Origin: Hydrolagus colliei
Taxonomy: Eukaryota
Length of the DNA: 64,000 bases
Assembly: GCA_035084275.1 (NCBI GenBank)
Contig: CM068770.1
Location: forward strand, 4,030,001-4,094,000
Reading direction: 5' to 3'
Both the position numbers and the translations under genes were made by a program. How positions within the stretch are numbered: position 1 is the first letter of the stretch; each line of letters opens with the position of its first letter. Below are positions 22,641 through 64,000 of this stretch, in pieces. The notes under the pieces were generated by a model. That model did no database searches. It saw only the letters and a program-made list of their open reading frames with translations, and was not told where the DNA came from.

Positions 22641-23272
22641 GCAATCCGAAAAGAGAGATTAACACGGTTAAATCCTATAAAAGCGCTTTCGAAGCCAACC
22701 TCCTGCCTCAACAGAGGCCTGGCTGAACGCTAACCGCGTTAGTTTGCACCAATGATCCATTTAAAGGGTTAACGTTTCCAAAACAGAGAGAGAAAAAATA
22801 ATTAGACGGTTTCATTTCTCTCTCTCTCTCTCTCTCGCTCTCTATCTCTCTCTTCCCCTCTGCGTTTTTTTTTCTCGAAAACATCTCCACGCAGGTGAAG
22901 TTAAGAAGCAATGACAAAGAAAGAGAAAACGTGGTTAGAACGCACGGGTCTGTATTCTAATCCTAACGCACGAAGCGCGCGTTTGAACTCACAACGGTTC
23001 ACGCGAGAGAGGGCTGAACACTCAGCGCAGATTTCCTGTAGACGTGACACTGCCTCTCGTCGCCTCTCTGCAACTTCAGCCTTATCCAGTCCCTCTTTGA
23101 CTTATCGTTATGATTGTTACTACTGTCCTATTACTCTTGTCCCGTTAGTGAAGTGGCTTCAATGGGTTTGTAGAGGAACAGAAGAACCCAATACAGTGTG
23201 GGTCTCAGTGTCTCGGGACGTCTCACTCCCCCCCCCCCCCCCCCCCCCCACCCCCACCCTCCCCCGATTCAC

Positions 23273-23421
23273 TTTCGGGCAGTGAATTTCTCTCTCAGGT
23301 CCTGTCTTGAGATGTGGACTGCGGCGTATTCCGTTTCTTCAGGTACCGTTGGATTGTGGTGAGATAAACCCGTCGAGTCTCGAGACCTCGTCTTGATTTC
23401 TCTGGCTGCAGTGTACGGGCT
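23273..23421 (-). CDS. Gene A cytoplasmic exon (phase 0 to 2) with ITSM-like TEYAAV
   Basis: SPYTAARE...PEETEYAAVHISRQDLREKFTAR; acceptor TTTGCAACAG, donor AA|GTGAAT; motif at 23317-23334. Confidence 0.82.
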
Positions 23422-23968
23422 CTGTTGCAAATATAATAATAATAATATTAATAATAATAATAATCCTTGCTTTTTCACATCTTCTAGACGTCTCAAAGCG
23501 CTTCACAGAATAGACTGTACATTTGTGGGTGAAACGCGGCAGCCAATCGCGCACAGCAGCGTCCCCCCACACGCGGTCGTGTGTTGAAATGACCAATTAT
23601 ATTATTGTGTTTTTTGGGGGGAGGGTGTGTGTGTGTGTGTGGAGTAAGTAAACTCGCCCAATCCTTCCAGAAGATATGGTTCATTTCACCTCCTCCCCAC
23701 CTCGACACTCGAACATGTGCAGCGCTTAGTAGACATTTCATTATTAATAATCTTAATTAGAATGCTCGCGTTTGATACAGGGACATCCTCCCAACGCAAG
23801 AGGCATTGCCATCTAATTCTCTATTGTGTTTTGGATTATCCAGCAAATCGCGGCGTTGAGACGTCTCAAAGCGCTTCACAGAATACCCCGTAAAGTCTAG
23901 TGACTGAGTATACTGTGTGCAAAATAAGCCACTCGATAAAGCTAAGTCTTTGGATTGTAAGACTGTAC

Positions 23969-24075
23969 CTCGGGTTGGTGGTTGCCACCTCTGGGTCTCG
24001 GTCTCCGAATGATGATGTCCGCGTAGGACACTTCCTCCTCTTCCTCGTGTTTACGGTCATCAAAGGAAACGGAGC
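23969..24075 (-). CDS. Gene A cytoplasmic exon (phase 1 to 0) with ITIM VSYADI
   Basis: Acceptor TTTTTTTTCTCTCTCACCCCCAG, donor GAG|GTACAG; SVSFDDRKHEEEEEVSYADIIIRRPRPRGGNHQPE; motif at 24014-24031. Confidence 0.87.
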
Positions 24076-24183
24076 CTGGGGGTGAGAGAGAAAAAAAAAT
24101 CACGCATTCATTCCTTCATTCTTTCATTCATTCCATCTGCAAACAAGCTACGGGGGTGTCGATGACAATGTCGTTCGACTTAC

Positions 24184-24243
24184 TCTGTGCTGGTGTCTGT
24201 GGATTGTGAAGAGCTTTCTTCTGCACTACTGCGTATACTGTAT
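24184..24243 (-). CDS. Gene A cytoplasmic exon (phase 1 to 1) with ITSM-like TVYAVV
   Basis: Acceptor GGAACTTGCAG, donor CAGA|GTAAGT; DTVYAVVQKKALHNPQTPAQ. Confidence 0.85.
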
Positions 24244-29992: not shown

Positions 29993-30091
29993 CTTTCAGC
30001 TGCCGTTTCATTACGCAGTAGATGGAAATCAGCACAGACACCACCACAGCTACTGCCAGCGCAGGCAACAACACACAAAACAGCTTCGAGC
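29993..30091 (-). CDS. Gene A transmembrane exon (phase 1 to 1), uncharged TM
   Basis: Acceptor TTCTCGTTCACAG, donor AAAG|GTGAGA; GSKLFCVLLPALAVAVVVSVLISIYCVMKRQLK. Confidence 0.9.
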
Positions 30092-31184: not shown

Positions 31185-31403
31185 ACGAGTGCAACGCTTC
31201 GAGACGCCCTCCAGACCCGAAAGACGCTTCATCCAATGTATTTTGGATAAAAATAAAACAACTTTATTATATTTAAAATAGATCAGATATCCTGAGCAAC
31301 TTTGTCTGAGACTCAGGAAGAGAGAACTCAAGGAACAAAATGTATCTTGGCAATTTGCCTGAACGACTTGGCAGTGAAACTTAATGGGTTTTATTTTACT
31401 TAC

Positions 31404-31715
31404 CCACAGCACGTAATCGCGTGAAAACTTTGGACCTATTCTGCCCGTGGATGTTGTTCGCCTCACACAGGTACGTTGCCTGATCCTGCGACTGTAGAAA
31501 ACCGGTTTGGTTTATGGTAAGCGTCCGCTGAGTTTGGTTTGTCTCCGCGAGTTTCTCTCCGTCTTTAATCCACGTCAATGTGCACCCTGGGTTACAGTCC
31601 ACGGAGCAGGTCAGTTCTAGGAAGGAGCCCTCAGAGACAAAGACGGAGATGTTCGCAGGCTGATATGTGACTTGTCCGTTTGTCCTGTACGTGATGACAG
31701 GTTTCTGCGGAGCAT
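31404..31715 (-). CDS. Gene A Ig domain 3 exon (C2/I-type, Siglec-like)
   Basis: 312 nt, phase 1 to 1; YAPQKPV...VSEGSFLELTCSVDCNPGCTLTWIKDG...DQATYLCEANNIHG; CCCTATCAG acceptor, GTAAGT donor. Confidence 0.92.
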
Positions 31716-31798
31716 CTGATAGGGAAACGGAACAAGAGCTCTTATACAAAACATAAGATAAAAATAATAATAATACTTGCATTAATATAGCGCCTATA

Positions 31799-31913
31799 GA
31801 GTCCTGCTCACTGGTTAGAGCTCTCGCTTTACAAGCGTGAGACCTGTGTTTCGAATCCAGGCAGGTCAGGGCGAAACCTTGGGCAAGTTTCTTTACTCCA
31901 CACACACACACAC

Positions 31914-31959
<46 letters not shown>

Positions 31960-32182
31960 GCCGAATAATATTCCCTCCAAAAAAGCATCTATAATAAATT
32001 GGTCATTTTCAATCCACGACTGTTTGTGGGGGGGACGCTGCTGCGTGCAATTGGCTGCCGCGTTTCGCCCACAACTATACGGTCAATTCACTTTACAGTA
32101 TATTCTATGAAGCGCTTTGAGACGTCTAGAAGATGTGAAAAGGCGCTTTAGCAAATACAAGTTATTATTAGTATATTATTAT
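31799..32182 (+). mobile_element. tRNA-derived SINE, full length
   Basis: All modules present; inverted relative to the 30852-31184 copy. Confidence 0.92.
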
Positions 32183-32343
32183 TATCAAAATGCTTTACAG
32201 AATAATAAAGTGTATATTTTGTAAGCGAAATGATGGAACAAAAGAGCCTGTTAGACGAGGACAGAGGACAACAGGAATTGTTAGAAATAAATACACTTCC
32301 AGATTGCGGGAAGACAGTTTAACATGTAATTGGTGAGACTTAC

Positions 32344-32622
32344 ACTCGATACACAGTCTGACTTCAGTCCGAGCTACGGCTGCGTGAACATTGGTCTTGG
32401 TGCTGATCTGACACGCACACACACTCCCATTGTCTCTCATTCCGGCAGTGATGGGAAGTTGGCTGGTGAACAATCCAGAGTCCTTGGAGACTGAGCCACT
32501 GATATTCTCTGCGTGCAGTTCACAGGTGAAGGCGAGGTTCATGAAGGGAGATACCTGAGCAGAGCAGTTTAGGGTAGACCTACGTCCTACAACCAGGACG
32601 GACGAAGAGATGCGTGGAGTGT
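32344..32622 (-). CDS. Gene A Ig domain 2 exon (C2-type, resembles Siglec domain 2)
   Basis: 279 nt, phase 1 to 1; DTPRISSSVLVVGRRSTLNCSAQ...FTSQLPITAGMRDNGSVCACQI; TCTCTTCTGCAG acceptor, GTAAGT donor. Confidence 0.88.
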
Positions 32623-33099
32623 CTGCAGAAGAGAAGGTTCAACGGTATGAAAGTACATGAGTCTGTCGATGTCAGAGGTGATAACGCTGTCACTTTGCAG
32701 CAATGCTTCACAATAATAATACTGCAATAATAATCTTTATAATTGGTACAGTGCGATTCATAGAGGGAGGACATCTCAAAGTGTTCCACGGGATTTATTG
32801 GAGGGACTGGCTGTTTGTAAGAAGAGAGGGGCGGCCCATTCGCATTAAATGTGCCACAAACTGCCCTAAAGTGAATAACCGAGTCTGTTTTTTATCAGGA
32901 GATCGCAGAGCCAGGTGGGGAGGGAAGGCAGTGTGAAAGTAAAATGATTTGGCTATTTCTGTAATAACTTTCATGTGCAACAGCAGTTGCAAACCCAAAG
33001 TCTGACGACATTTTGAGAGGGTGAACTGCGCGAACGACACGAGGTGAAAAACCTATCGCTGTTGTCGATAGCACGTGTTTTAGAATAGGAACACACACA

Positions 33100-33340
33100 C
33101 ACACGCACGCACGTACACACACACACGCGCCTAATAATAATCCCTCCTCCCAAAAAACTACATTAATAAAATTGGTCATTTCAATCCACTACTGTTTGTG
33201 TTGGGGAGACGCTGATGTGTGCAATTGGCTGCCGCGTTTCACCCATAAATATACAGTCAATTAACTTTACAGTCTATTCTGTGAAGCGCTTTGAGACGTC
33301 TAGAAGACGTGAAAAGCGCTATGTCAAAATGCAGGGATTA
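33100..33340 (+). mobile_element. tRNA-derived SINE lacking head
   Basis: (CA)n, central block and tail. Confidence 0.85.
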
Positions 33341-33767
33341 ATTGGCAAAACAACAATTGGGAGGAGACCAGATATGATATCAACAGGAATGTTTCTAAAT
33401 ATCCTTCTCAGTTTCGATGTGACTAATAAAACAACACAATTGTACATTGATATGTACACTCCCCTAATCTTACCCCACAGCCCTGTAAATTTTCCTTTTC
33501 AAATAATGCTTGCATTTCATCTTCTGGTTATTCACCCACCCACCACAGGAAACAGTCTCTCCCTATTTACTCTTATCAAACCCAAACGATTCCTAGCTTC
33601 ACTAGTCTCTCCACATAAGATCCACGTCCCTGGAATCATTCCGGTAAATTTCCACAATTTCACTTTTGTTGCAAAATAGTTCCGTGCGAAATTTAAATGT
33701 CTTAAAATTCCTCCAAAACAAGAAATTAGAACCGGTTTTAGCCGTCAGATCATTGATTTGATTTACG

Positions 33768-33910
33768 TTCTGACGAAGGGTCGTGGACCCGAAACGTTGA
33801 CTCGCTTTTTCGTTCTCTCTCCATAGATGCTGCCTGACCTGCTGAGTGTTCCCAGCCATTTCTGTTTGTGTTTCAGATTTCCAGCATCCGCAGTGTTTTG
33901 CGTTTTCATT
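33768..33910 (+). mobile_element. Penelope-like element terminal fragment with hammerhead core
   Basis: CTGACGAAGGGTCGTGGACCCGAAACGTTGACTC...ATAGATGCTGCCTGACCTGCTGAGTGTTCCCAGCCATTTCTG. Confidence 0.7.
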
Positions 33911-34143
33911 TACGTTAAGATTCGCTTTGTGCAGAACTGTGACCAGTTCTTAAATTCAGCCTTTGGGAGCTATCTTACTGTAAGTCTTTTTTTTTGGAAC
34001 CAAAATATAGAAATAAGATTGATTTTCAAATATTTCCTCCCAAATTTAAAGATTTAAGGCTAAACCCGGGTGGAACTTTAGTGCTGGTGTACTAAGCAAG
34101 CATCAGCCCTTGTTATTAATTTACCATAATAAAAAAACTTTAC

Positions 34144-34464
34144 CAGAAACATGTAACCGTGTCCCTCCTCCTGTTTTATCCGCAGTCCCGTTTTCTGTTG
34201 TGATGGTGACCTCACAGTAATATGTTGTATTAGATTGTTCAAGAGAGACGTTTGCAATCTGTGTGGTTATCCAACAGCTAACAATCTCTGTGTGTTCAGT
34301 GCAGAACACATTATTCTTCAGGAAAAAACGAGGTTTTGGAAACCAGTGTATAAAAATCAAGTCACTTCGAATTCCAGTGTAACTAAATGTACAGTTTAAC
34401 GTGACCGATTCCCCTCTCCATACGCTGACCTCATGAGGCTGAGTCACCTCTAGGATCACAACAC
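34144..34464 (-). CDS. Gene A V-type (germline VJ) exon
   Basis: 321 nt, phase 1 to 1; VTQP..V.VWRGESVTLNCTF..W..YYC..GGGTRLHVS; CTCACCAG acceptor, GTAAAG donor. Confidence 0.93.
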
Positions 34465-34469
34465 CTGGT

Positions 34470-34575
34470 GAGATAATAATAATAATATTAATAATAATAT
34501 TAATAATCCTTGCATTGATAAAGCGCCTTATCACGTCATCGTGACGCCTCTAAGCGCTTCACAGAATATACTACA
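34470..34575 (-). mobile_element. SINE 3' tail fragment abutting the V-exon acceptor
   Basis: rc TGTGAAGCGCTTAGAGGCGTC...ATCAATGCAAGG(ATT)n directly followed by ATCTCACCAG. Confidence 0.85.
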
Positions 34576-34854
34576 GACTGTGAGTGTGTGTGGAGGACGG
34601 CATCAAGTCTGTCATAACGCAAATGTACCCAGATTAAACTAACGAGGATCAACAGTGATTCATGTTAAACATTCGTTTGTGCTCTAATCACACGCAAACC
34701 AAATTCAAATAAAAAACTTTGGTTGTTTCCCATTTCAGATCAATGTGACATTTTCAAGGAGGAATTTCTGTGAAGCTATTTCTCTATTTTATTGTTAAAC
34801 GTTTCACTGAAACCACGACACTCTCGCTTGGCACACGTCGCTCCTTATCACAAT

Positions 34855-35075
34855 AATAATACTGGTAACAATCCTTGCATTCAATATAGCGGCTTTTCAC
34901 CTCTTAATCGACGTCTCAAAGCGCTTCACAGAATATACTGTAAAGTGAATCGACTGTATATTTGTGGGCGAAACGCGACAGCCAATTGCGCACAGCAGCG
35001 TCCCCCACAAACAATCATGGATTGAAATGACCAATTTGTTTTATTATTGTGTTTTTTTTGGAGGGATTATTATTA
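34855..35075 (-). mobile_element. tRNA-derived SINE lacking head
   Basis: Central block and tail. Confidence 0.85.
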
Positions 35076-35923
35076 GGATTCCAACTGTGTGTGCCTCTTG
35101 ATGTCACATTAGGAAGATTTTAACTGTAAAGAAAACAACTTTAACTGTCGCAACTTGAGGATCCAGTCATTCGGAAATCATCTGCAGCCAAAATCAGTCA
35201 TTTCAAACACTGAACATTTTAGCAGTTAAAATTCAATAAAACTTTTGCTTAAAAGATGAGAATTTGGTCACTCAGTCCACGACTGTTTGTGGGTCACTGA
35301 CATCTGTGCGCAGTCGGCTGCCGCATTTCACCCACAACATATACAGTCAATTCACTTTACGGGATATTGTGTGAAGCACTATGAGACGTCTCGAAGACCT
35401 GATAAAGCGCTGTATCAAATGCAAGAATTATTATTATTATTAAACACGTAAAAGCTACCGAAAGATTCAATTTGTAAAGGATTTTCAGGACCTCCATATT
35501 ACACACTCGCATTGTGATAAATAATTTTGATAAAGATTTTGGTACATCAACTTTTTCGCTTTGCCAAGAGGTCTCAAAGTGTTTCAGATGATTTACCGGA
35601 GTGGAGCTGCTGTAGCTCAGAGGTTAGAGCACTCGCCTTACAAGCGTGAGACCTGTGTTCGAATCCATGCAGATCAGAGCGAAACCTTTGGCAAGTTTCC
35701 TTACTTCACACAAAGCGCTTCCGTGAAGCGCTTTGAGACGTCGATAAGATGTGAAAAGCCGCGATATCAAAGGCAAGGATTATTACTAGTATCATCACTG
35801 TAAAGGGGGTTCGGTGGACGAAACGCGGCAGCCAGTTCGTGCGCAGCGGCGTCCCACAAACAGCCACGGGAACCCTTTGAGTGGCCGTTGAACCGCGATC
35901 AGTCGCATGGATGAATCTCAACC

Positions 35924-35970
<47 letters not shown>

Positions 35971-35975
35971 CTCAC

Positions 35976-36024
35976 CATGTGCCTCAGCCAGCACAGTAAA
36001 GAGCAAGCTCGGAATTAGCAACAT
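35976..36024 (-). CDS. Gene A signal-peptide exon: MLLIPSLLFTVLAEAH(G)
   Basis: GCGATG start, 49 nt, phase 1, donor G|GTGAGT, hydrophobic leader. Confidence 0.88.
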
Positions 36025-36129
36025 CGCAGAGGCTAAACTGTGATGACAATTCTTTATTCCAGGCGTTTCCCAGGCTGTGCCAGTGCTGTCTGAGGCTCGG
36101 TGCAGTGAACAAACACACATCTCACTCTG

Positions 36130-36206
36130 GAGGAAGCCGCAAAGTGCAAATTCGACTAAATGCCATTGTTTCCGACCCAGATTAGGAGGAAGTTACGTGA
36201 GGAAGG
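36130..36206. promoter_or_regulatory. Cluster of ETS/PU.1-type GAGGAAG sites upstream of gene A
   Basis: GAGGAAG at 36130, 36186 (GAGGAAGT) and 36199, 100-180 bp upstream of the ATG. Confidence 0.45.
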
Positions 36207-36489
36207 GAGGAGAGCTTTTTTTTTCTTTTTCTTCTTCTTCGGTGCAGTGCTGTCTGTCTGTCTGTCTTGTCTGTCTGTCAGGATGTGATAGGACCTGTTA
36301 ACAGTACTGATCCAAATCTGGTAGCAGTTACATATACACACCCACCACACACTCTCACACACACATTCTCTCTCTCTCACACGCACACACATACACACGT
36401 GCACAGAAGAGGTTCTCAGTCCCTCAAAGGCCAAAAGTAGCCAACGCGACAACCCAATCTGAGTTACAAGCCAAATGTCAACCTGCCAC

Positions 36490-36830
36490 AGCCTGTTCCA
36501 CTTTTTTCTCTTGAATCAGAAAACTGTGGGTTCGAGCTTTGAACTCAGAGACAAAGGCTGACGCTCTCACTGTTGGGGAGAGACCCGAGGCAATACCGGA
36601 GGGGTGATCTGCAGAATCACAGCCGAGGTTCCGTCTCTGTGTTGAGGTTCATGTTACAGAGATCACATCATCTCAGAGTGAGTGTTACTCCCCCGTGTCT
36701 TGGCCAACGATCCCTCAGATGCTCCTGAAATAGACGACCGCTATTTATCCGCCCGCAGGTTGGCGACAAAGTGCACAGTCACTACACTTATACGGTGAAT
36801 CCCGTCAAGCGCCTGGAGGTGGGCGTCCTG
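36490..36830 (+). mobile_element. Degenerate DeuSINE-type element
   Basis: TGAATCAGAAAACTGTGGGTTCGAG head, GGCTGACGCTCTC, AGCCGAGGTTCCGTC, CCCCGTGTCTTGGCCAA, L2-like tail remnant. Confidence 0.55.
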
Positions 36831-37984
36831 GTTCGAAAGGCCGTTGCATCCAATGCGAGGACTGTTTCTATTATAATAATATATAATAATATTCCTTGCG
36901 TTTGATGAAGCGGCTTTTCACATCTTATCGATGTCTCAAAGGGCTTCGCAGAATATACCGTAAAGTGAATTGACTGTATATTTGAGGGCGAAACGCGGCA
37001 GCCAATTGCACACAAACAGTCGTGGATTGAAAATGACCAATATTTATTACTGTAGTTTTTTTGGGGACAGATTATTTCTGAACGTGAGGACATCTTATCT
37101 AGTCTCGTATTCCTTCTGACTCCTTAGTCCCTGTGATTGTCCCTTCTCTCTTACGCAGACCCTCAGGGCTCAACTAGTCTATGTTTTGGTGTGTGTACTC
37201 GAATACGGATGACTTCAATCAGAGGGATCATGTAGAAGAGGGGTAGGGGGTGGGTGGGGGGTCAAGGATGGAGTCTTGGGATACACACACTCATCACCAT
37301 GTAGGGACAGAAGGAGAAACCATTTGTAGAGACAAAATGATGTGGAGACCTTCCCTTCGCCTTGTCCCCATATTTAGTGCCTTGGGACGTCCTCCCAATT
37401 TGAAAGGCGCTGTACTATCTTACAGTATTATTATTCTGCAACTGGATTCCTGTAGCTCAGTGGTCAGAGCACTCGCCTTACAAGTGAGAGAGCTGGGTTC
37501 AATTCTAGGCAGGTCAGGGCGAAACCTCGGGCGAGTATCTTTGCTCCACGTGCCTAATAATAATCCGTCCAAATATAACCTACAATAAAAAATGTATTCA
37601 TCGCGATCCACATCTGTTTGTGGGCGACGCTGCTGATGTGAAGCCATCTCAATAGCAGCAGCAGAAGTTCCAGCACTTTGATTCCCACAGCCCACAGTCG
37701 CAGCAAGAAAAACTACAACTCCCAAGTTGCTTTCTGACAACATTCGCAGCCCTGAACATCGAGGGCTTTCTGTTAGACTGGCCTCTGGTGGATTTCAAGT
37801 GTCATGCGGCACACTTAAAACGATCCATTTAAACCCAGCGAATTACAGCGCCTCGCACTCAAAACGTGATAGCAGCAATCCTTGAATTTGACACAGCTCA
37901 TTATCACGTCATCCAGACGTCCCAAAGCGCTTCGCAAGAATAGACTGTGTGAAGTGAATGGACTTTTGTATTTTGATTCCAAGC

Positions 37985-38180
37985 TCCTCACTCTTGTGTT
38001 CGAATCCCTCCACTCTCCCTCAAATCACCACCCCTACCTCTCTGACCTCCTCTCTCCTCACAACGGCAACCGTTGCATTCGCTCTACCGGGTCTGGCCTC
38101 CTCCTTGTCCCCCCCCGAATCCTCGGAGGCCATGCCTTCAGCCACTACGCCCCCGAGGCTCTGGAACCCCCTCCCAACAT
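37985..38180 (+). mobile_element. L2 LINE ORF2 fragment
   Basis: Encodes HHPYLSDLLSP...IRSTGSGLLLVPPRILGGHAFSHYAP. Confidence 0.8.
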
Positions 38181-39542
38181 TCGCTCTGAAAAGCGCTGTA
38201 TCAAAATGCAAGGATTATTATTGTCCTGGGAGCCAATTTGCATGTGTCGTGTCCTGAACTACTCATATACGTAATTACATACATATGTAAATCCGAAAAT
38301 ATTATTTCCAAAAAGAATTCAGTCTCATTTGCACTTGAAAGCATCAGTTATTTCTGCTTGCTCCGTCTCCCTCGGGAACTCGATCTACAGATTTGACTTG
38401 TACCGATCGTTCCTCGTTGTCCTTTATGCTGATCTGCAGGTTCTCTTAGCTCCTCGCGTGTGGCCCGGGCAACGAGGAGCCAGGGATTGCTTGCCGGCGG
38501 TGGATAAAGTCCAGGAGGTATCTCTCTCCAGTGATTTCAAGTCCTGTCAAGTCCCAATTTCAACCTGGTGAGAAGCAGACTTCGGCTGAGCTTCACTTTT
38601 TCTTGCTGATTTACTCCATCTGGTGGTGAGAGTGTATTTAAAACAAACTGCCACTAATAATAATAATCCTCGCATTTGATTTAGAGCTATTCACGCCCTC
38701 TAGGCGTCTCAAAGCGCTTCACAGAATAGACTGTAAAGTGAACTGACCGTACATTTGTGGACGAAACGCGGCAGCCAATCACGCACAGCAGCGTCCAACA
38801 CAAAGTGACCAATTTATAATATTTTTTCCGAAGGAATTATTAGCCCCGGAAGAATAATCTGCCGGACGACGAACAGCCGGGTTGCTGCTAACCGCTCGGT
38901 AGCCAGAGGGGTGTGGAGTGAGGAACGTTTGTGGGCAAAAGGCTTCACTGGGACATGGCATCCTAGGACAGACCAACACTTGACCATCAGGGAGGTGGAA
39001 GGTGTTACTAGACGGACTTTGATCTTAACTCACTCCTACTGCTTCAGTTGCCTGGTAATTTTCACCTGTCTCCCTATTGCCCTCCTCAGGTGATAAGTCA
39101 CTTGATCAGTCGGTAAATAAAAAAAACGTAACGGAGACAGCTGTGATCGGTGTCTGTATGTATGTGTGTGTGTGTGTTGTGTGTGTGTGTGTGTGTGTTG
39201 TGTGTCTGTGTGTGTGTGTGTGTGTGTTTGTCTAGAGTTTGCTCACCAGATGGTCAGATGGTCGAGGTGACAATTTACAGAGTTTCCCTGGTGATGAGCC
39301 AGTCTGTGGCTCGCCCAACAAACCCATACCATCACATCTGACAAATTAACGTTGCACAGAATGGGTGAAAAGCTCTTTGGCCAATGCGAGGCAGGGCTGA
39401 TGTGGGGTGGTGGGTCTGTGGCCTGCCGGATTCTTAGGTATCTATTTAAAGAGCGAGGGGGCAATGGGGTGGGGGGGGTATGAGTGGGGGGAATGGGACG
39501 AGTTGGTCGATCAATAAAAGAACCAGCATGAAAATATATAAT

Positions 39543-40143
39543 TGTAAGAATACGGCTTTATCCGGTATTTAGAAAGCAATTCTATTTAATGAAGCACAAT
39601 CAATCATTACCCGAGTAACACCACAATACAGCGCTTCAAATAAAACAATACTTCCAGAGGGGTGCTTCTGCTGGATCGGCACCGATCTGGTCTCTCTCTC
39701 TCGAAGACAAGGAAGCCGCCTCTGACTAACACGGTCACTTGTTTATAGTCCACAGTCCGAGTGTCATACACATGATGTTATCGTGGACTCCTCTTGCACA
39801 TCTCGTGGGTGTCACACGTCTCGCCATCCTTTCCCGCACCTTGCCCTGGTTTCTCCGAAGGGCCCCCCCTACCCGATGATTGTGTCATCTGGGTGTCTTC
39901 CTGCCCCATGTACTCATTATTCCTCCATCCGAGGTCTGTTCCTTGTCTGCCCAGTACACAATACACTTATCTCGTGATCACAAAGTCACAACTTCTGCAA
40001 AAACAGGTTACACACGACACAACACTTCTCCACTCGTCCCTGGTTCTATTTTGAATCGTCTGTGGTTTCCACACTCCCCAACGTCTATCTGGCTTCTCCT
40101 TATTCTGCACTTTACCAATTCGCTGGACACTCTAAGTTACGCA
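39543..40143 (-). mobile_element. Possible solo LTR
   Basis: Minus strand shows TATAAAC (about 39745), then ATTAAA (about 39590), then a TTCTTACA end at 39543; no TSD found. Confidence 0.3.
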
Positions 40144-40187
40144 CGTACGCAGTAGCAAAAGCAATGTTAATATAAAATATAAAATCT

Positions 40188-40437
40188 AACAATAATAATC
40201 AATGCATTTTATGTAGCGCTTTTCATGTCTTCTAGACGGCTCAAAGCGCTTCACAGAATATACTGGATTGAAATGACCAATTTTATTATTGCGTGTGTTT
40301 TTGGAGGGATTATTATTAAACGCGTGTGTGTGTGTGGAGTACGGAAACTTGCCCAAGGTTTCGCCCTGACCTGCCTGGATTCGAACACAGGTCTCTCCTG
40401 CTTGTAAGGCAAGTGCTCTAACCACTGAGCTACAGGA
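40188..40437 (-). mobile_element. tRNA-derived SINE, internally deleted
   Basis: Head and tail present; central block missing at CAGAATATACTGGATTGAAATG. Confidence 0.85.
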
Positions 40438-40519
40438 TTATCTAGCGCTCTGAGGTGCTATTACTTGCTATATAAATGCAAGTTGTTGTTGTTGTTCTTA
40501 TTCTTGTTCTGGTCGTAAG

Positions 40520-40602
40520 GTCTGGCTAAAGGGTTAATGAACCGAAAACGTCAACTCATTTCCCACTCTCCATAGATGCTGCCTGACCTGCTGCGTGTTC
40601 CT
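40520..40602 (+). mobile_element. Degenerate Penelope-like terminal fragment
   Basis: GAAAACGTCAACTC...CTCTCCATAGATGCTGCCTGACCTGCTGCGTGTTCC matches the 33768 copy. Confidence 0.6.
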
Positions 40603-40841
40603 GTGTGTGCATAGGAAACAACGCTAACTCAGGACCAGTGGTCAGACACACTTTATTTTTGGGTCGTATACCAACTACATCTCACTCGCTCTTCCTTCCT
40701 GTTTGACACAAAGCCTCTTCCCAGCCACGCACGCGAACTACGGTAATCGCTTTGCACTAGAAGCGGTTCTTAGGCTACAGAACGCAAGCAGAACAATGGA
40801 GATATTTTGAGGAGCTTTGGACTTTTTAACTGAGCGAGGCG

Positions 40842-40890
40842 ATGTGGGTTTTGGCAATCGCTCTCTCTCTGGTGTTGGTGGGTGTGACAG
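40842..40890 (+). CDS. Gene B signal-peptide exon: MWVLAIALSLVLVGVT(G)
   Basis: GCGATG start, 49 nt, phase 1, donor CAG|GTGAGT; ETS-type CTTCCTTCCTG at 40691. Confidence 0.9.
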
Positions 40891-40918
40891 GTGAGTGATA
40901 TTCATACTACATGTTACA

Positions 40919-41062
40919 CGGAGTCCTGCAGCTCAGTGGTCAGAGCACTCACTCGCCTTACAAGCATGAGACCCATGTTCGATTCCAGGCAGGTCAGGGC
41001 GAAACCTTGGGCACGTTTCCATACTCCACACACACACACACACACACACACATCTACTCATA

Positions 41063-41100
<38 letters not shown>

Positions 41101-41330
41101 ACACACACACACACTTAATAATCCATCCCCCAAAAAAACCACAACAATAAAATTATTCATTTCAATCCACGACTGTTTGTAGGGGGGAACGCTGCTGTGC
41201 GCAATTGGCTGCCTGCCACGTTTCACCCACAAATATATATACAGTCAATTCACTTCACAGTATATTCTGTGAAGCGCGTTGAGACACCCAGAAGACATGA
41301 AAAGCACTATAGCAAATGCAAGGATAATTG
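40919..41330 (+). mobile_element. tRNA-derived SINE, full length
   Basis: All modules present; gene B intron 1. Confidence 0.9.
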
Positions 41331-41499
41331 ATATTCTGAAAATACTTTTGCCGTAGTTTCGAACTGTCTGTCAGCACAGTGGCTGAGGATCTCAAACGGA
41401 CCTGGACAATGTCAGGTTTCATGGTGTTTTGTGCTTCAAGACAAAGTAAACACAGTATTTTAATGGACAATCATGTTTAACTTCTAAAATTGTGGTAAT

Positions 41500-41820
41500 A
41501 AACAATCCTTGCATTTGATATAGCGCTTTTCACAGCACGAAAGACCTGTTTTCGCTGTCTCACAGCGCTTCACAGAATATACTGTAAAGTGAATTGACTG
41601 CATAGTTGTGGGCGAAAAGCGGCAGCCGATTGCACACAGCAGTGTCCATCCCCCACAATTAGCTGTAGATGGAAAGAACCAATTTATTATTGTTTTTTTT
41701 TGAGGGATTATTGTCGAGCGTGTGGGGTAAGGAGACTTGCCCCAAGATCTCACACTGCCTGAAATCGAACCTAGGTCTCTCGTGTGTGAAGCCAATGCTC
41801 TAATACTGAACTACATGGCT
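41500..41820 (-). mobile_element. tRNA-derived SINE, diverged full length
   Basis: Inverted partner of the 40919 copy in the same intron. Confidence 0.85.
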
Positions 41821-42108
41821 CCAAACCGTGGCAATAAATGACAATAAACAATCCTTTTATTTGGTGTAAGTGCCTCAAACATCATCATACGATTTACTGT
41901 ACTGTGTAGTGACTGTGCATTTTGTAGTGAAACACAGTAGCCAGATTTGCTGTAAGATTCTACGGTTGTATGATCACGGAACATTGCTGAAGCGTTCTAT
42001 ATTTTATACGATGAACTCGTACCGTAAAAGAGATGGTGAGCGCACAGTAATTAATGTCGCTCATTTCACATCAACATCTCGGCTTCACAGATTGTTTTAT
42101 CTCACCAG

Positions 42109-42429
42109 GTGGTGTGATCCTAGAGGTGACTCAGCCTCGTGAGGTCAGCGTATGGAGAGGGGAATCGGTCACGTTAAACTGTACATTTAGTTACACTGGA
42201 ATTCAAAGTGACTGGATTTTTACACGCTGGTTTCCCAAACCTCGCTTTTTCCTGAAGAATTATGTGTTCTGCACTGAACACACAGAGATTGTTAGCTGTT
42301 GGATAACCGCACAGATTGCAAACGTCTCTCTTGAACAATCTAATACAACATATTACTGTGAGGTCACCATCACAACAGAAAACGGGACTGCGGATAAAAC
42401 AGGAGGAGGGACACGGTTACATGTTTCTG
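42109..42429 (+). CDS. Gene B V-type (germline VJ) exon
   Basis: 321 nt, phase 1 to 1; 311/321 nt identical to the gene A V exon; CTCACCAG acceptor, GTAAAG donor. Confidence 0.93.
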
Positions 42430-43144
42430 GTAAAGTTTCTTTATTATGGTAAATTAGTAACAAGGGCTTATGCTTGATTAGTACACCAACACAGAAGTTC
42501 CACTTGGGTATAGCCTTCAAGTTTTGGGGGAAATATCTGAAATTCAATCTTACTTCTATATTTTTGTTTAAAAAAGACTTACAGTAAGATAGCTCCCAAA
42601 GGCTGAATTTAAGAACTGGTCACAATTCTGCATGGTTACGTGTTGATGGTAAAGTTTTATTTATTATGATAAACTAATATCAAGGGCTTCGGCTTGCTTA
42701 GCACACCAGCAAAACATTATTGAGGTCAGGCTAATGGGGCTATAGCTGATACGTGTGATTCTGTTGCCTTTCTTGAATCACTGGTTAAGCACAGAATAAT
42801 AATGCTAATAATTATAAAAATAATGTTAATAATAATAATATAAGAAGAAAAGGAAGAAAAAATATTACAATCCTGGCATATGATACAATAAATTATCACT
42901 GCCCTTCATAATATATTCCTGTGAAGCGCTTTGCGACACGATTAGACGCTATATCAAATGCAAGGATCATTATTAATTTAGTGTTATCACGTTGTTGAGC
43001 CATCTCAAAGCGCTTCAAACAGTGAACTATAAGGTGGATTGACTGTGTGGTTGGGGGGGGGGGGGGGAGGGTGGGGGGGGGCGACACGGAGAGAATACGT
43101 GTTGCGGAAAGGAGCGTGACGTTCGTTTTGCTTTGACGTTTTAG

Positions 43145-43486
43145 TCCCGGATTCGGCTCCGACCGTCCGGCTTACACAGGGAATATTGAGAGCAGATGTC
43201 AGATCCTTTGTGCGGTGCGAGGCCTGGGGATTCTCTCCTCGAGACATCTCGCTGAGCTGGCAGCACCTAGGACACAGAGTCCCCAGCAACACCCAGGCTC
43301 CTCGGGCTCACAGATACACCAGCAAACTGCTCGAGGGCGACAGCGCGGACGATGGCACCTTCCACATCATCAGTGAACTGTGGTTCATCCCAACCCCCGG
43401 AGATCACCAGACAGACTGCGTGTGTCAAGTCAAACACTCCACAAGCGATGTGCCCCTATACGGACGTATATCACTGAACGTGAAAT
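43145..43486 (+). CDS. Gene B Ig domain 2 exon (C1-set-like)
   Basis: 342 nt, phase 1 to 1; PDSAPTVRL...CEAWGFSPRDISLSW...DDGTFHIISELWF...DHQTDCVCQVKH; GTTTTAG acceptor, GTGAGT donor. Confidence 0.92.
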
Positions 43487-44350
43487 GTGAGTCTGTTACA
43501 GTGCGTTAATCGCGTTTAAATTGATTGGAAGTTCAGCAGTGGTACGTGTACATTGTTTACTCCACAGGCCTACTCATAATCCGTTAAAAAACCCCACAAA
43601 ATTGGTCATTTCAATGCACACTGCCGAGCGCAATTGGCTGTCGCGTTTCGCCCACAAAATATACAGTCAATTCAATTTACAGTATATTCTGTGAAGCGCT
43701 TTGGGACGTCGATAAGACGTGAAAAGCGCTATATCAAATGTAAGGATTATTATTATTATCCCACATCCAATACAGTAGGATTTAGATTTTTTTTGGTGTG
43801 GTTTTAATCAGTTCCTTGGCAGTTAACTCTCACTATAGTAGGTTGACATTCATTCTTCACTGAGAATAGAGTGTGTGTGTGTGTGCATGTGTGAGAGTGA
43901 GTGTGAGGACAGACTGAGTGTGAGAGTGACTGTGAGAGTGATTACCGGAAAAGTTAAAATAAAAGTGCATGTCCCATGCATAAAGTCTCTCAGCATAAAG
44001 GAGTACATCATATAGTACGACCCAGTTAGTATAAATATAAGACAGAGGCAAGAAAAGGGAAAAGAGTGGTTAGGAGAATTCTTTTAACGCACAGACTAAT
44101 TCGGTCATGAAATGTCTTGCCAAGTAAATTGGTGCAGATCAGAATCCATTTGTGGGTTGTGAGTACATTGACGGGTACAAGACAGAGAGAGAGAGAGAGA
44201 GATGGTTGAAGGTGGGGAGAGGGTTGGGGGAATTGGGATCGATTGGGATCCAGGGCAATGGGATTGAATGGACAGAGAATGGGTGCAATGGGTTCGTTCC
44301 TCCCACGCTTGTAAATGTCTACACTTGTCTCTTACGGCTTTTGATTCCAG

Positions 44351-44668
44351 ACGCTCCGCAGCTCTCCGTCGCTTACCGGATCTCGGCGTCCGATCGGCTG
44401 CGGCCGGTGGAGCGAGGGACCCTCGACGTGGCCGAACGCTCGTTCCTGGAGCTGAACTGCACCGCGGACAGCCACCCGGCGTCCACAGTTACCTGGGAGA
44501 GGAAAGACGGCCGCGGCGGAAGCCTCCAGTTCGACACGGCAGTCGGCAGTGTCGTCTGGAGGAGGTCGGAGCTCAAGGCGACGGATGTGGGCATCTTGTG
44601 GTGCAGAGCGGACAATGAATGCGGCACAAGGACAAACTCTGTCGCGGTATATACGTCTCACCCCATTA
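44351..44668 (+). CDS. Gene B Ig domain 3 exon (C2/I-type, Siglec-like)
   Basis: 318 nt, phase 1 to 1; YAPQLSV...VAERSFLELNCTADSHPASTVTW...DVGILWCRADNECG; GATTCCAG acceptor, GTAAGT donor. Confidence 0.92.
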
Positions 44669-45174
44669 GTAAGTGCAGCACAGAGTAAACACAGTCAAAC
44701 GTCTCAGATAGGAAGTCCAGTGCTTAGAGCACTCGCACTTAACGAGGGAGAGAGACCTGGGTTCGTTTCCAGGGCGGGTCAGGGCGAAACCTCGGGCAGC
44801 TTTCCTTGCTCCACACACGCCTGCCAATAATTATTTCTTCTTATTATTATAAATAATGGATTGAAGTGACCCAATTTTTAAATTAAAAAATATATATATT
44901 TAAAGAAAAATAAATTGGTCGCTTCAATCTTTGTGGGACTATCGCGCGCCATCGGCTGCCGCATTTCGCCCACGAATACACACGGTCAATTCACTTTACA
45001 GTTTATTCTGCGAAGACACTTTGAGACACAGTCTAGAAGTGCTATATCAATTGCCGGGGTTCTTATTCATTACAGTTCTACTGTTCGAGGAGCAATTTTC
45101 TCTGCGTGTTAGACGCCCCGCAGTGTTAAACCGTCCACAGAAGCATCTGATAAGGCCTCACGTTGTTTCCACAG

Positions 45175-45258
45175 GTGCTTTCCCTTTTCGTGCCGTGACA
45201 GTCCCCATCTTCCTGGTCACCGTCGCCTTGTTGTTGATCTGGAGCAGGAAGTCCAAAG
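45175..45258 (+). CDS. Gene B transmembrane exon with Arg
   Basis: SAFPFRAVTVPIFLVTVALLLIWSRKSK; TTTCCACAG acceptor, AAAG|GTAAAG donor; Arg codon at 45189-45191. Confidence 0.9.
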
Positions 45259-45427
45259 GTAAAGCTCACTAAAGCATTTTGACACTGAAGCCGATTTTAC
45301 GTTGGGTTTTTAATGCAAGTTGTTGCGTTCAGGCACTCTTCCTCCTACTCCACCCACTCCCCCTGCCCTCCTACCTTTCCCGATCCCGGTGTCCGCTGAT
45401 TCCTATTTGCTCTTGTTCCATTTGCAG

Positions 45428-45452
45428 ATCCGTTTTGCTTCTCCAAATACCG
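45428..45452 (+). CDS. Gene B cytoplasmic micro-exon (25 nt, phase 1 to 2): DPFCFSKYR
   Basis: TCTTGTTCCATTTGCAG acceptor, CG|GTAAGT donor. Confidence 0.78.
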
Positions 45453-45499
45453 GTAAGTCAGGATTTCAGTCTGGCATTTGATACGGTTGTCGGCATCAG

Positions 45500-45630
45500 A
45501 GGAACGTGGAAGGAAATCAAGAACAGTACATTGGGACAGATGGAGATAGTGCAACAGGAAGGACACAGGTTGAAGATTGTCGAGGGCAATTTTAGGACTG
45601 AAACCGCAAAGTTATTCCTTTATTCAGAAC
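45500..45630 (+). mobile_element. Degenerate CR1 ORF2 fragment
   Basis: Encodes GHRLKIVEGNFRTETAKLFL, like the CR1 C-terminal GHRFKI motif. Confidence 0.6.
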
Positions 45631-45635
45631 ACCTT

Positions 45636-63932: not shown

Positions 63933-64000
63933 AGTTGAACGATAATAATATACGGTTATATAATAATCCTTGCATTTGATATAGCGCTTCTCACATCTTC

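What the first reader, a model, noticed from the sequence alone, without database searches (positions are those of the whole stretch)
33930..42632. V exon homogenised between two otherwise ancient paralogs (gene conversion or inverted exon transplant)
Seen: the V exons (34144-34464 minus; 42109-42429 plus) differ at 10 of 321 nt, 8 nonsynonymous (V2G, H11R, R33Q, L36W, I39T, H40R, N52Y, T68A) and 2 synonymous, and the last third is identical. Homology continues about 200 bp into the downstream intron with more mismatches and indels, then stops; upstream it covers only ATCTCACCAG. Leaders, domain 2, TM and tail are unalignable by eye, and the domain 3 pair shares only motifs (YAPQ..YR..V.E.SFLEL.C..D..P..T.TW..DG). 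Four replacements cluster in the BC loop/C strand (CDR1-like surface). Inference: recent conversion between inverted copies, as known for Siglec-5/14 and Siglec-11/16. The 8:2 ratio alone is too small to claim positive selection.
Basis: partly seen in the sequence, partly recalled or inferred. Interest (0 to 1): 0.75.

Follow-up and report, generated by a model that had tools for sequence, protein, structure and literature searches.

The report
Shared V exon in paired receptors
Two neighbouring, oppositely oriented immune-receptor genes of a chimaera-like fish are old and very different, yet share an almost identical ligand-binding exon because one gene's exon was copied into the other; this is the gene conversion known from mammalian paired receptors, here in a cartilaginous fish.

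Summary
The V exons 34144-34464 (-) and 42109-42429 (+) differ at 10 of 321 nt. Homology runs about 203 nt into the downstream intron and about 12-19 nt upstream.

They belong to two head-to-head genes.
- Gene A encodes V-D2-D3-TM and a tail with ITIM and ITSM motifs. It is the orthologue of Callorhinchus milii "siglec 6".
- Gene B encodes V, a SIRP-like C1 domain, an I-set domain, and a TM segment with an Arg conserved across five chondrichthyan species.

D2 and D3 are 24-33% identical between A and B, and D3 dS is saturated. V-exon dS is 0.028. Trees of D2+D3 group sequences by gene across holocephalans and elasmobranchs (99/96). V groups by taxon, and B-type monophyly for V is rejected (p-AU 5e-7).

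New findings:
- A was the donor: it stays colinear with C. milii A beyond both tract ends.
- A relic of B's older V-exon end plus intron (42634-42711) sits directly after the tract, marking a non-homologous junction.
- A 129-nt identical run points to a later, shorter conversion.
- A stingray B-type V groups with a manta A-type V, so the exchange recurs.

Verdict: a real gene conversion or exon replacement in a SIRP-like inhibitory/putative-activating receptor pair. It is a new member of a known kind.

The parts
33930..34483 (-). Arm A of the inverted homology tract: splice acceptor, V exon and 214 nt of intron 2. This is the native (donor) copy.
   Evidence: It is orthologous to C. milii gene A over its whole length (L001 10909-11482, 73%). 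It stays colinear with C. milii for 450 nt beyond the 5' end and 23 nt beyond the 3' end.
42091..42632 (+). Arm B of the tract: acceptor, V exon and 203 nt of A-type intron. This is the recipient copy.
   Evidence: The flanks on both sides are unrelated to gene A and to C. milii gene A.
42634..42711 (+). Relic of an older gene-B V-exon 3' end (15 nt, GGTTACGTGTTGATG), its GT donor and about 63 nt of intron. It lies 1 nt after the tract end.
   Evidence: 67/78 identical to arm A and 64/78 to arm B; alignment score 99 against a maximum of 31 in 2000 shuffles; it keeps ancestral states (TACGTG, TTTATTTATT) shared with both C. milii copies.
42310..42438 (+). 129-nt run with no A/B difference (exon nt 202-321 plus 9 intron nt; counterpart in A is 34135-34263). 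Probably a younger, shorter conversion tract.
   Evidence: this is the longest identical run. Permutation p = 0.00025 for 41 differing columns in 546.
35976..36024 (-). Gene A exon 1 (leader, MLLIPSLLFTVLAEAH).
   Evidence: 81% identical to the C. milii P0001 leader.
34144..34464 (-). Gene A V exon (phase 1-1).
   Evidence: Pfam V-set.
32344..32622 (-). Gene A domain 2 exon (degenerate C-type Ig domain).
   Evidence: 56% aa identity to C. milii A D2. No Pfam hit on its own.
31404..31715 (-). Gene A domain 3 exon (I-set/Ig_2).
29993..30091 (-). Gene A transmembrane exon (no charged residue inside the TM).
23269..24243 (-). Gene A cytoplasmic exons: 24184-24243 (TVYAVV), 23969-24075 (VSYADI, an ITIM) and 23269-23421 (TEYAAV, ITSM-like, then stop).
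   Evidence: Aligned with the tail of C. milii P0001.
40842..40890 (+). Gene B exon 1 (leader, MWVLAIALSLVLVGVT).
42109..42429 (+). Gene B V exon.
43145..43486 (+). Gene B domain 2 exon: C1-set with the SIRP-like motif GFSPRDISLSW.
   Evidence: Pfam C1-set 3.7e-7. Aligned to SIRP-alpha 2wng and SIRP-gamma 4i2x. 40% identical to sawshark P0018.
44351..44668 (+). Gene B domain 3 exon (I-set/Ig_2).
   Evidence: 41% identical to P0018 D3.
45175..45258 (+). Gene B transmembrane exon (AFPFRAVTVPIFLVTVALLLIWSRKSK). The Arg near the outer end of the TM is conserved. If the donor is not used, the protein ends in GKAH followed by a stop.
   Evidence: The Arg and the VxVPIF motif are shared with P0018, P0030 and P0136.
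33766..33912 (.). Interspersed chondrichthyan repeat in gene A intron 2, starting about 18 nt beyond the tract end.
   Evidence: copies in the window (61 kb, 40.6 kb) and in the skate and stingray loci.

Best explanation
Genes A and B are an ancient head-to-head pair of SIRP-like immunoglobulin-superfamily receptors. A carries ITIM/ITSM motifs and is putatively inhibitory. B has a conserved arginine in its transmembrane segment, no ITIM-bearing tail found in the window, and is putatively adaptor-coupled and activating.

The ligand-binding V exon of B was overwritten by A's V exon through non-allelic (interlocus) recombination between the inverted copies. At least one event copied A's acceptor, V exon and about 203 nt of A's intron into B. 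Its 3' end joined non-homologously 15 nt before the end of B's old V exon and left that stub and its intron start as a relic. This fits one-ended strand invasion and synthesis on A, followed by end joining.

A later, shorter conversion of at least 129 nt re-homogenised the 3' third of the exon. Since then 8 replacements and 2 silent changes have accumulated, four of them in the B-C loop and C strand.

The same kind of V exchange has happened in other chondrichthyan lineages.

Shown: the sequence pattern, the direction, the relic, the tree incongruence and the motifs. Inferred: the repair mechanism, the signalling polarity, and that homogenisation is kept by selection to match ligand binding.
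For: Identity and extent of the tract.

Age contrast: V dS 0.028 and dN 0.033, against a saturated D3 dS (2.2) with 33/101 aa identical, and D2 with 22/90 aa identical. The A-to-C. milii orthologue dS is 0.35-0.53.

Direction:
- The tract, including its intron part, is orthologous to C. milii gene A.
- winA stays colinear with C. milii A 450 nt past the 5' end (71%) and 23 nt past the 3' end (17/23). winB does not.

Relic.

Layering:
- Exon 3.1% against tract intron 9.9% divergence, Fisher p = 0.0017. Long-term exon and intron divergence to C. milii are similar (23.7% and 26.7%).
- A 129-nt identical run, permutation p = 0.00025.

The pair is old:
- C. milii has a syntenic head-to-head pseudo-B.
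- B-type orthologues exist in a sawshark, a stingray and two carpet sharks.
- The A|B split is supported at 95/98 on D3 and 99/96 on D2+D3.

V incongruence.

Motifs: ITIM/ITSM in A; conserved TM Arg in B.

SIRP likeness: (2wng, 3.7e-13).

Precedent: SIGLEC11/16 lie head-to-head 9 kb apart with repeated conversion of the V-set exon region (PMC5701461). Xenopus CEACAM pairs show exon-restricted conversion between oppositely oriented genes (PMC5112662).
Against: - There is no read-level or population data, so assembly correctness and polymorphism are untested.
- The repair mechanism is inferred from a single junction. A partial tandem V duplication inside B followed by ordinary conversion could give the same relic.
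- The 3'-side colinearity of A with C. milii rests on only 23 nt.
- The layering rests on small counts. The 5' two-thirds of the exon (10/201) does not differ significantly from the intron (20/203).
- B's 3' end is not defined, and no expression data exist. The Arg lies at the edge of the hydrophobic stretch, and its adaptor is unknown.
- In C. milii gene B is degenerate. In the sawshark the A and B V domains are only 53% identical, so homogenisation is episodic, not universal.
- The stingray/manta V grouping compares two species, and that clade test was named after the tree had been seen.
Confidence: 0.8

Rival explanations
1. A single non-homologous exon transplant or duplication (A to B) happened once, with no later gene conversion. 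The lower exon divergence and the identical 3' third would then reflect constraint or chance.
For: - The relic and the abrupt 3' junction show at least one non-homologous event.
- The 5' two-thirds of the exon (10/201) is not significantly less diverged than the tract intron (20/203).
- The F and G strands and the J-like motif may be constrained.
Against: - The 129-nt identical run has permutation p = 0.00025, and it runs 9 nt into the intron.
- A-B dN/dS is about 1.2, so there is no sign of constraint in the A-B comparison itself, though on only 10 differences.
- The relic is itself 86% identical to A but only about 60% to C. milii A, which implies an earlier exchange.
- V exchange recurs in other lineages.
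Confidence: 0.12
2. An assembly artefact: one V copy is a mis-joined or duplicated segment, for example a chimeric or foldback read giving an inverted duplicate.
For: Inverted near-duplicates can arise from long-read foldback artefacts. No reads were available to check.
Against: - The copies differ at 10 exon sites, 20 intron sites and 4 indels.
- Each copy sits between its own leader exon and its own downstream exons, with intact phase-1 splice sites.
- 7.6 kb of unique sequence with two leader exons separates them.
- C. milii has the same head-to-head layout.
- The relic is diverged rather than identical.
Confidence: 0.03
3. An old duplication with the V exon kept similar by strong purifying selection and no sequence exchange.
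For: Ligand-binding domains can be conserved.
Against: - Synonymous divergence is 0.028 in V but saturated in D3 (D2 too diverged for a dS estimate).
- Homology extends 203 nt into the intron.
- V is 93% identical within the species but 58% to the C. milii orthologue.
- B-type monophyly for V is rejected at p-AU 5e-7.
Confidence: 0.01
4. The direction was B to A: A's V exon and intron start came from B, at least for the latest tract.
For: Polarised exon differences show more derived states in A (5) than in B (2). This is compatible with either direction for the youngest 129-nt tract, whose direction cannot be read.
Against: For the large tract, A's flanks and the tract's intron part are orthologous to C. 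milii gene A, and the relic of a displaced exon lies in B, not in A.
Confidence: 0.04

Closest known systems
SIGLEC11/SIGLEC16 and SIGLEC5/SIGLEC14 paired receptors (primates)
   Same: - Head-to-head or adjacent inhibitory (ITIM) and charged-TM partner genes.
- The exon region encoding the V-set ligand-binding domain is homogenised by repeated gene conversion, so the converted part groups by species and the rest by gene (PMC5701461, PMC6288428).
- The activating partner is often pseudogenised, as with SIGLEC16P. Here the counterpart is the C. milii pseudo-B.
- Constraint on the converted exons is relaxed.
   Different: - Here the tract is one exon plus about 200 nt (about 540 nt), not 2-3 kb spanning several exons.
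- The two genes are far older: the pair predates the holocephalan/elasmobranch split by the D2+D3 tree, and their other Ig domains are only 24-33% identical.
- The V domain is not Siglec-type. It has the canonical B-F cysteines, Glu instead of the essential Arg, a J-like GGGTRL motif, and no Siglec among its PDB sequence hits.
- The charged residue is an Arg at the outer TM edge rather than a mid-TM Lys/Arg.
CEACAM paired receptors (human CEACAM1/CEACAM3; Xenopus ceacam301/303)
   Same: - Conversion is restricted almost exactly to the ligand-binding N (V-like) exon, with unalignable flanking introns.
- The paired genes have opposite transcriptional orientation.
- Non-synonymous changes accumulate on the CC'C''FG face after conversion (PMC5112662).
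   Different: - A different IgSF family: CEACAM N domains lack the canonical disulfide.
- Here homology extends 203 nt into one intron.
- One tract end is a non-homologous junction with a relic.
SIRP family (SIRP-alpha / SIRP-beta1 / SIRP-gamma)
   Same: - Best solved-structure matches for B's V + C1 are SIRP-alpha 2wng (3.7e-13) and SIRP-gamma 4i2x.
- The V domain has a J-like G-strand motif.
- D2 carries GFSPRDISLSW, against GFSPRDITLKW in SIRP.
- A's tail motifs (xSYADI, TEYAAV) resemble SIRP-alpha's ITYADL and TEYASI (from my own knowledge of SIRP-alpha).
- The family has the same inhibitory/activating paired logic.
   Different: - D3 is I-set/C2-like, whereas SIRPs are V-C1-C1.
- A's D2 has lost recognisable C1 features.
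- B has a TM Arg at the outer edge, not SIRP-beta's mid-TM Lys.
- Orthology and synteny with tetrapod SIRPs were not tested.
- NCBI names the relatives 'siglec', 'sialoadhesin-like' or 'MAG-like'.

Membership tests
Paired inhibitory/activating immune receptors homogenised by gene conversion | Two linked genes with a near-identical ligand-binding domain but divergent remaining domains | tested here: met
   V is 96.9% identical at nt level and 92.5% at aa level. D2 shares 22/90 aa and D3 33/101 aa, and the TM and tail are unrelated.
Paired inhibitory/activating immune receptors homogenised by gene conversion | One partner has cytoplasmic ITIM/ITSM motifs | tested here: met
   Gene A carries TVYAVV, VSYADI and TEYAAV in exons 24184-24243, 23969-24075 and 23269-23421. 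This is sequence only. Phosphatase recruitment was not tested.
Paired inhibitory/activating immune receptors homogenised by gene conversion | The other partner lacks an ITIM and has a positively charged TM residue that couples to an ITAM adaptor | tested here: inconclusive
   - B's TM (FPFRAVTVPIF...) has an Arg conserved in 5 species.
- No ITIM- or ITAM-like exon was found downstream.
- The Arg lies at the TM edge, B's 3' end is undefined, and adaptor binding cannot be tested here.
Paired inhibitory/activating immune receptors homogenised by gene conversion | Phylogenetic incongruence: the converted exon groups by species or taxon, the rest by gene | tested here: met
   - D3: B clade 95/98.
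- D2+D3: A|B split 99/96, and a holocephalan clade is rejected at p-AU 0.023.
- V: split by taxon at 100/100, and B monophyly is rejected at p-AU 5e-7 and 5e-74 with 16 sequences.
Paired inhibitory/activating immune receptors homogenised by gene conversion | Co-expression in the same cells and shared ligand specificity | not testable with these tools
   No transcript or binding data are available.
Siglec (sialic acid-binding Ig-like lectin) | V-set domain with the essential sialic-acid-binding Arg on the F strand (PMC6288428) and the non-canonical cysteine pattern (own knowledge) | tested here: not met
   - The F strand reads TTYYCEVTI: it has the canonical Cys (C25-C84 pair), with Glu where the Siglec Arg would be.
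- The G strand has the J-like GGGTRLHV motif.
- PDB sequence hits to the V domain are Ig-lambda V, TCR V-alpha and SIRP-alpha D1, with no Siglec.
- Placing the Arg position relies on my own knowledge of Siglec V-sets.
Siglec (sialic acid-binding Ig-like lectin) | C2-set domains plus an ITIM / ITIM-like tail, which is the basis of the automatic 'siglec' names of the relatives | tested here: met
   D3 hits MAG and Siglec-8 structures. A's tail has an ITIM plus TEYAAV. These features are shared with many IgSF receptors and are not diagnostic.
SIRP family | V domain with a J-like motif followed by C1-set domains | tested here: inconclusive
   - B's V + D2 match SIRP-alpha and SIRP-gamma.
- D2 is Pfam C1-set at 3.7e-7.
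- D3 is I-set/Ig_2, not C1.
- A's D2 gives no Pfam hit.
SIRP family | Orthology or synteny with tetrapod SIRP genes; CD47 binding | not tested
   No tetrapod loci were compared. A lone V-set exon 10 kb away has a marginal CD47-type Pfam hit, but no CD47-like multipass TM region was found.

The most novel reading that the evidence does not exclude
This locus may be a living example of the oldest known paired-receptor system. An inhibitory and an Arg-TM SIRP-like gene pair would have arisen before holocephalans and elasmobranchs split (over 400 My ago by common estimates). Their ligand-binding V exon has been swapped between partners repeatedly and independently in the window species' lineage and in myliobatiform rays (C. 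milii's pseudo-B V remnant is also closest to its own gene A). It would mean that the decoy or counter-balance arms-race logic, and exon-scale conversion as its maintenance mechanism, were already in place at the base of jawed vertebrates. The relic at 42634-42711 would be a rare preserved footprint of how such an exon replacement is made.
Probability: 0.5. Interest if true: 0.65.

Novelty: new member of a known kind. Interest (0 to 1): 0.5.

Why it matters
Paired receptors kept matched by gene conversion are documented mainly in mammals (Siglec, CEACAM, KIR/LILR, SIRP) and in frogs (CEACAM). My literature searches found no such case described for cartilaginous fishes.

This locus adds four things:
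- It shows the phenomenon in a holocephalan.
- It ties an A-type and a B-type gene lineage together across sharks, rays and chimaeras.
- It shows that public annotations call these genes 'siglec', 'MAG-like' or 'syg-2-like' although the V domain is SIRP/antigen-receptor-like.
- It preserves a junction relic that bears on the repair mechanism.

It also gives a small natural experiment: 8 replacements on an otherwise identical V domain, half of them in the CDR1-like region. This allows a test of whether the inhibitory and the activating partner have begun to differ in ligand binding.

Tried and rejected
- **Homologue search with gene B's protein.** The word-index search found only the C. milii A orthologue. 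B-type orthologues appeared only with the exhaustive HMMER search on the D2 exon.
- **C. milii B orthologue.** It is present but degenerate, so it could only be used for its V 3' part and D2 5' part.
- **Fold search with the V model.** It gave only generic Ig-fold matches (IL-18R, Lrig3, TCR, VNAR; TM about 0.65) and no family assignment.
- **Further gene B exons.** tblastn with shark B-type tails, and regex searches for ITAM, ITIM or Cys-rich tail motifs in 45.3-58 kb, found nothing credible. B's 3' end stays open.
- **CD47 idea for the V-set exon at 55.3-55.6 kb.** The Pfam hit is marginal, no multipass TM exons were found and PDB hits are generic, so I did not pursue it.
- **TE-mediated capture of the exon.** The interspersed repeat near A's tract end starts about 18 nt or more beyond the boundary and is absent at B's junction, so this is not supported.
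- **Stingray locus.** No A-type partner lies within the 10-kb flank, so the head-to-head arrangement could not be checked in elasmobranchs.
- **Skate locus.** The pair there is an ordinary 95% direct segmental duplication, not an exon-restricted event.

Full report
**1. Observation**

The window has no N runs. The reverse complement of 34144-34464 and the plus-strand segment 42109-42429 are both 321 nt and differ at 10 positions. In the phase-1 reading frame this is 8 replacements (V2G, H11R, R33Q, L36W, I39T, H40R, N52Y, T68A) and 2 silent changes. Positions 202-321 are identical.

The repeat finder reports this as the longest inverted repeat of the region: 429 nt ungapped, 95% identical, arms 7620 nt apart. 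A gapped alignment extends it to A 34483..33930 = B 42091..42632. Upstream of the exon only about 12-19 nt ending in ATCTCACCAG are shared. Downstream, 203 nt of intron align with 20 mismatches and 11 gap columns. No third V copy exists in the window.

**2. Anatomy**

The two exons belong to two head-to-head genes whose start codons lie 4.8 kb apart.

Gene A (minus strand):
- leader 36024-35976
- V 34464-34144
- D2 32622-32344
- D3 31715-31404
- TM 30091-29993
- cytoplasmic exons 24243-24184 (TVYAVV), 24075-23969 (VSYADI) and 23421-23269 (TEYAAV, then stop)

Gene B (plus strand):
- leader 40842-40890
- V 42109-42429
- D2 43145-43486
- D3 44351-44668
- TM 45175-45258

All internal exons are phase 1-1 with canonical AG/GT sites.

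Gene A therefore encodes an ITIM/ITSM-bearing receptor. Gene B's TM exon encodes AFPFRAVTVPIFLVTVALLLIWSRKSK. If its donor is not used, the protein ends five codons later. No ITIM- or ITAM-like exon was found downstream.

Pfam calls V-set and Ig_2/Ig_3/I-set in both proteins, and C1-set in B's D2 only. The best solved-structure relatives of B's V + D2 are SIRP-alpha (2wng, 3.7e-13) and SIRP-gamma. They include the D2 motif GFSPRDISLSW, against GFSPRDITLKW in SIRP. The V domain alone hits Ig-lambda V, TCR V-alpha and SIRP-alpha D1, and no Siglec.

**3. How different is the rest of the two genes?**

- D2: 22/90 aa identical.
- D3: 33/101 aa identical, with dS saturated (2.2) and dN 0.82.
- V exon: dS 0.028 and dN 0.033.
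- Leaders, TM segments and tails do not align.

**4. Relatives**

The closest public protein to A is Callorhinchus milii 'sialic acid-binding Ig-like lectin 6' (P0001; 54% identity over 99% of A). Its leader, domain order and tail motifs match. The window therefore most likely comes from another holocephalan. This is an inference from dS of 0.35-0.53 and from alignable introns.

In the C. milii locus (L001) a partner lies head-to-head upstream. It consists of a V-exon 3' remnant (4660-4545, minus strand) with an in-frame TAT-to-TAA stop, and the 5' part of a B-type D2 with its upstream intron (about 3888-3700). The rest is unrecognisable. The A/B arrangement therefore predates the split from C. 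milii, and B is a pseudogene in that assembly.

An exhaustive HMMER search with B's D2 exon found intact B-type proteins in four elasmobranchs:
- Pristiophorus japonicus (P0018)
- Hemitrygon akajei (P0030)
- Hemiscyllium ocellatum (P0051)
- Chiloscyllium plagiosum (P0136)

The three that extend through the TM (P0018, P0030, P0136) share the TM motif x-x-x-R-x-V-[ST]-x-x-[IV]-F with the same Arg, and have tails without ITIM; P0051 ends before the TM. A-type, ITIM-tailed orthologues occur in a dozen sharks and rays.

**5.

- D3 alone: the five B-type sequences (window B plus four elasmobranchs) form one side of a branch with 95/98 support.
- D2+D3: the A|B split has 99/96 support, and forcing the three holocephalan sequences together is rejected (p-AU 0.023). 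Long branches would, if anything, pull window B towards A, so this result is conservative.
- V: the opposite pattern. Holocephalan V domains (winA, winB, C. milii A) split from elasmobranch V domains at 100/100, winA and winB pair at 94-95, and a B-type V clade is rejected (p-AU 5e-7).
- V with 16 sequences: the B label needs three separate placements, all forced by starred branches. The stingray B-type V (L003 7442-7792) pairs with the manta A-type V at 97/99. It is 70% identical to it, against 50% to the sawshark B-type V. A clade of the two elasmobranch B-type V domains is rejected at p-AU 0.009. That group was named after the tree had been seen, so this p-value is weaker evidence.
- Within C. 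milii, the pseudo-B V 3' part shares C. milii-specific states with C. milii A.

V thus groups by taxon and the body of the genes by gene, in more than one lineage. In the sawshark, however, the A and B V domains are only 53% identical, so the exchange is episodic.

**6. Direction and mechanism**

The whole tract, including its 203 nt of intron, aligns with C. milii gene A's V exon and intron 2 (73% over 582 columns).

- Beyond the tract's 5' end, window A continues to align with C. milii A intron 1 for 450 nt at 71%. This includes an old SINE fragment present in both species.
- Beyond the 3' end, window A matches C. milii A at 17 of the next 23 nt. Window B at that point carries unrelated sequence.

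A is therefore the native copy and B the recipient.

One nucleotide after the tract ends in B lies a second, diverged copy of the last 15 nt of a V exon, its GT donor and about 63 nt of intron (42634-42711). It is 67/78 identical to A's tract and 64/78 to B's tract. Its alignment score is 99, against a maximum of 31 in 2000 shuffles. It keeps ancestral states seen in both C. milii copies.

I read this as the stub of B's previous V exon. The incoming A sequence replaced B's exon from about 12 nt upstream of the acceptor and was joined, without homology, 15 nt before the old exon's end. One-ended invasion of a broken B into A, synthesis through the exon and 203 nt of A's intron, then end joining would give exactly this structure. 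That mechanism is an inference. A partial tandem V duplication inside B is an alternative. V-exon tandem duplication does occur in this family: Hemiscyllium P0139 has two V domains.

The relic itself is far closer to window A (86%) than to C. milii A (about 60%). This hints that B's earlier exon had also been homogenised with A after the species split. That is weak evidence, resting on 78 nt.

**7. Time layers**

A-B divergence is 3.1% in the exon and 9.9% in the tract's intron part (Fisher p = 0.0017). Over the long term, exon and intron diverge about equally: 23.7% and 26.7% to C. milii.

All 10 exon differences lie in the first 201 nt. The longest identical run is 129 nt (42310-42438) and crosses the exon/intron border (permutation p = 0.00025).

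The most economical reading has two steps:
- An older transplant, with intron JC distance 0.106. That is about one third of the 0.33 distance to C. milii.
- A younger, shorter conversion of at least 129 nt over the 3' third of the exon.

Using C. milii to polarise the differences gives 5 A-derived, 2 B-derived and 3 ambiguous exon changes, and 8, 9 and 2 respectively in the intron. dN/dS between A and B is about 1.2 on 10 changes.

**8. Where the replacements lie**

An AlphaFold2 model of the V domain, built from a 5-sequence alignment (pLDDT 83.9), gives these strands: A 3-8, A' 12-15, B 21-30, C 36-42, 52-58, 61-70, F 81-90, G 93-106.

- Position 33 is in the B-C loop.
- Positions 36, 39 and 40 are in the C strand.
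- Position 52 opens the next strand, and position 68 is in the following one.
- Positions 2 and 11 flank strand A.

The F-G (CDR3-like) region is identical in A and B.

**9. Comparison with known systems**

The pattern is the one described for several paired receptors:
- SIGLEC11/16: head-to-head, 9 kb apart, repeated conversion of the region holding the V-set exon, trees by species against trees by gene, relaxed constraint, and a frequently null activating partner (PMC5701461, PMC6288428).
- SIGLEC5/14 (PMC4042635).
- CEACAM pairs, where conversion is confined to the N-domain exon between oppositely oriented genes (PMC5112662).

Membership in the functional class 'paired receptors homogenised by conversion' is met on four of five features. 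It is open on adaptor coupling and co-expression.

Membership in the Siglec family, as the automatic names of the relatives suggest, is not supported by the V domain:
- It has the canonical B-F cysteines.
- It has Glu at the position of the essential Arg.
- It has a J-like G strand.
- It has no Siglec among its PDB sequence hits. The position of the Arg is from my own knowledge of Siglec V-sets.

The proteins are SIRP-like in V, D2 and tail motifs. They are not V-C1-C1, and orthology to tetrapod SIRPs was not tested.

**10. Rivals**

- Purifying selection on an old duplicate is excluded by the synonymous, intronic and tree evidence.
- An assembly artefact is unlikely. There are 30 substitutions and 4 indels between the arms, each arm is embedded in its own intact gene, the layout is the same in C. 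milii, and the relic is diverged. It cannot be formally excluded without reads.
- A single transplant with no later conversion remains possible at about 0.1.

**11. Verdict**

This is a real and well-supported case of interlocus V-exon replacement and conversion (A to B) in an ancient SIRP-like inhibitory/putative-activating receptor pair of a holocephalan. It is a new member of a known kind. It is interesting for three reasons: its phylogenetic depth, its recurrence across chondrichthyan lineages, and the preserved breakpoint relic.

Noticed in passing
window 55330-55632 (-): A lone V-set exon (DDTPSIIHTSVGKSVTLTCEK...). Pfam V-set scores 7e-9. There is also a marginal match to the CD47-type V-set model (21.6 bits against a cut-off of 21). 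This is notable next to SIRP-like genes, but no CD47-like multipass TM exons were found and PDB hits are generic.
   Followed up: partly
L001 (Callorhinchus milii) 4545-4660 (-) and about 3700-3890 (-): A degenerate gene-B orthologue lies head-to-head with the 'siglec 6' gene. It has a V 3' remnant with a TAT-to-TAA stop, a 5' V part that cannot be aligned, and a truncated D2. A TE is inserted 30 nt into the following intron. It is not annotated in the record.
   Followed up: yes
L002 (Leucoraja erinacea) 11.5-16.5 kb and 30.3-36.6 kb: A direct 95%-identical segmental duplication of V-D2-D3-TM lies inside one annotated gene model. Copy 1's TM exon runs into a stop (FCLFRNR*), giving a tailless twin of the ITIM receptor. 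Here V is the least similar exon (87% aa against 96-97%), the opposite of the window's pattern.
   Followed up: partly
P0139 (Hemiscyllium ocellatum A-type protein): It carries two tandem, nearly identical V domains. This is a V-exon tandem duplication within the same receptor family.
   Followed up: no
L003 (Hemitrygon akajei) 7442-7792 (+): The true V exon of the B-type gene lies 2.2 kb upstream of the annotated start. The public model P0030 instead begins with a TE-derived exon and lacks a V domain.
   Followed up: partly
window 30000-47000 and throughout: There are dense tRNA-related SINE copies (repeat families D1-D20, 60-140 nt units, both orientations) and (CA)n tracts. One old SINE fragment abuts gene A's V acceptor (34495-34580) and is shared with C. 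milii, so it predates the species split.
   Followed up: partly
window 63377-63998 (-) and 12577-13836 (+): Long open frames with no Pfam match. The first looks like the C-terminal part of a LINE reverse-transcriptase ORF (by eye). The second is a 420-aa ORF running into SINE sequence. Both are probably TE-derived.
   Followed up: no
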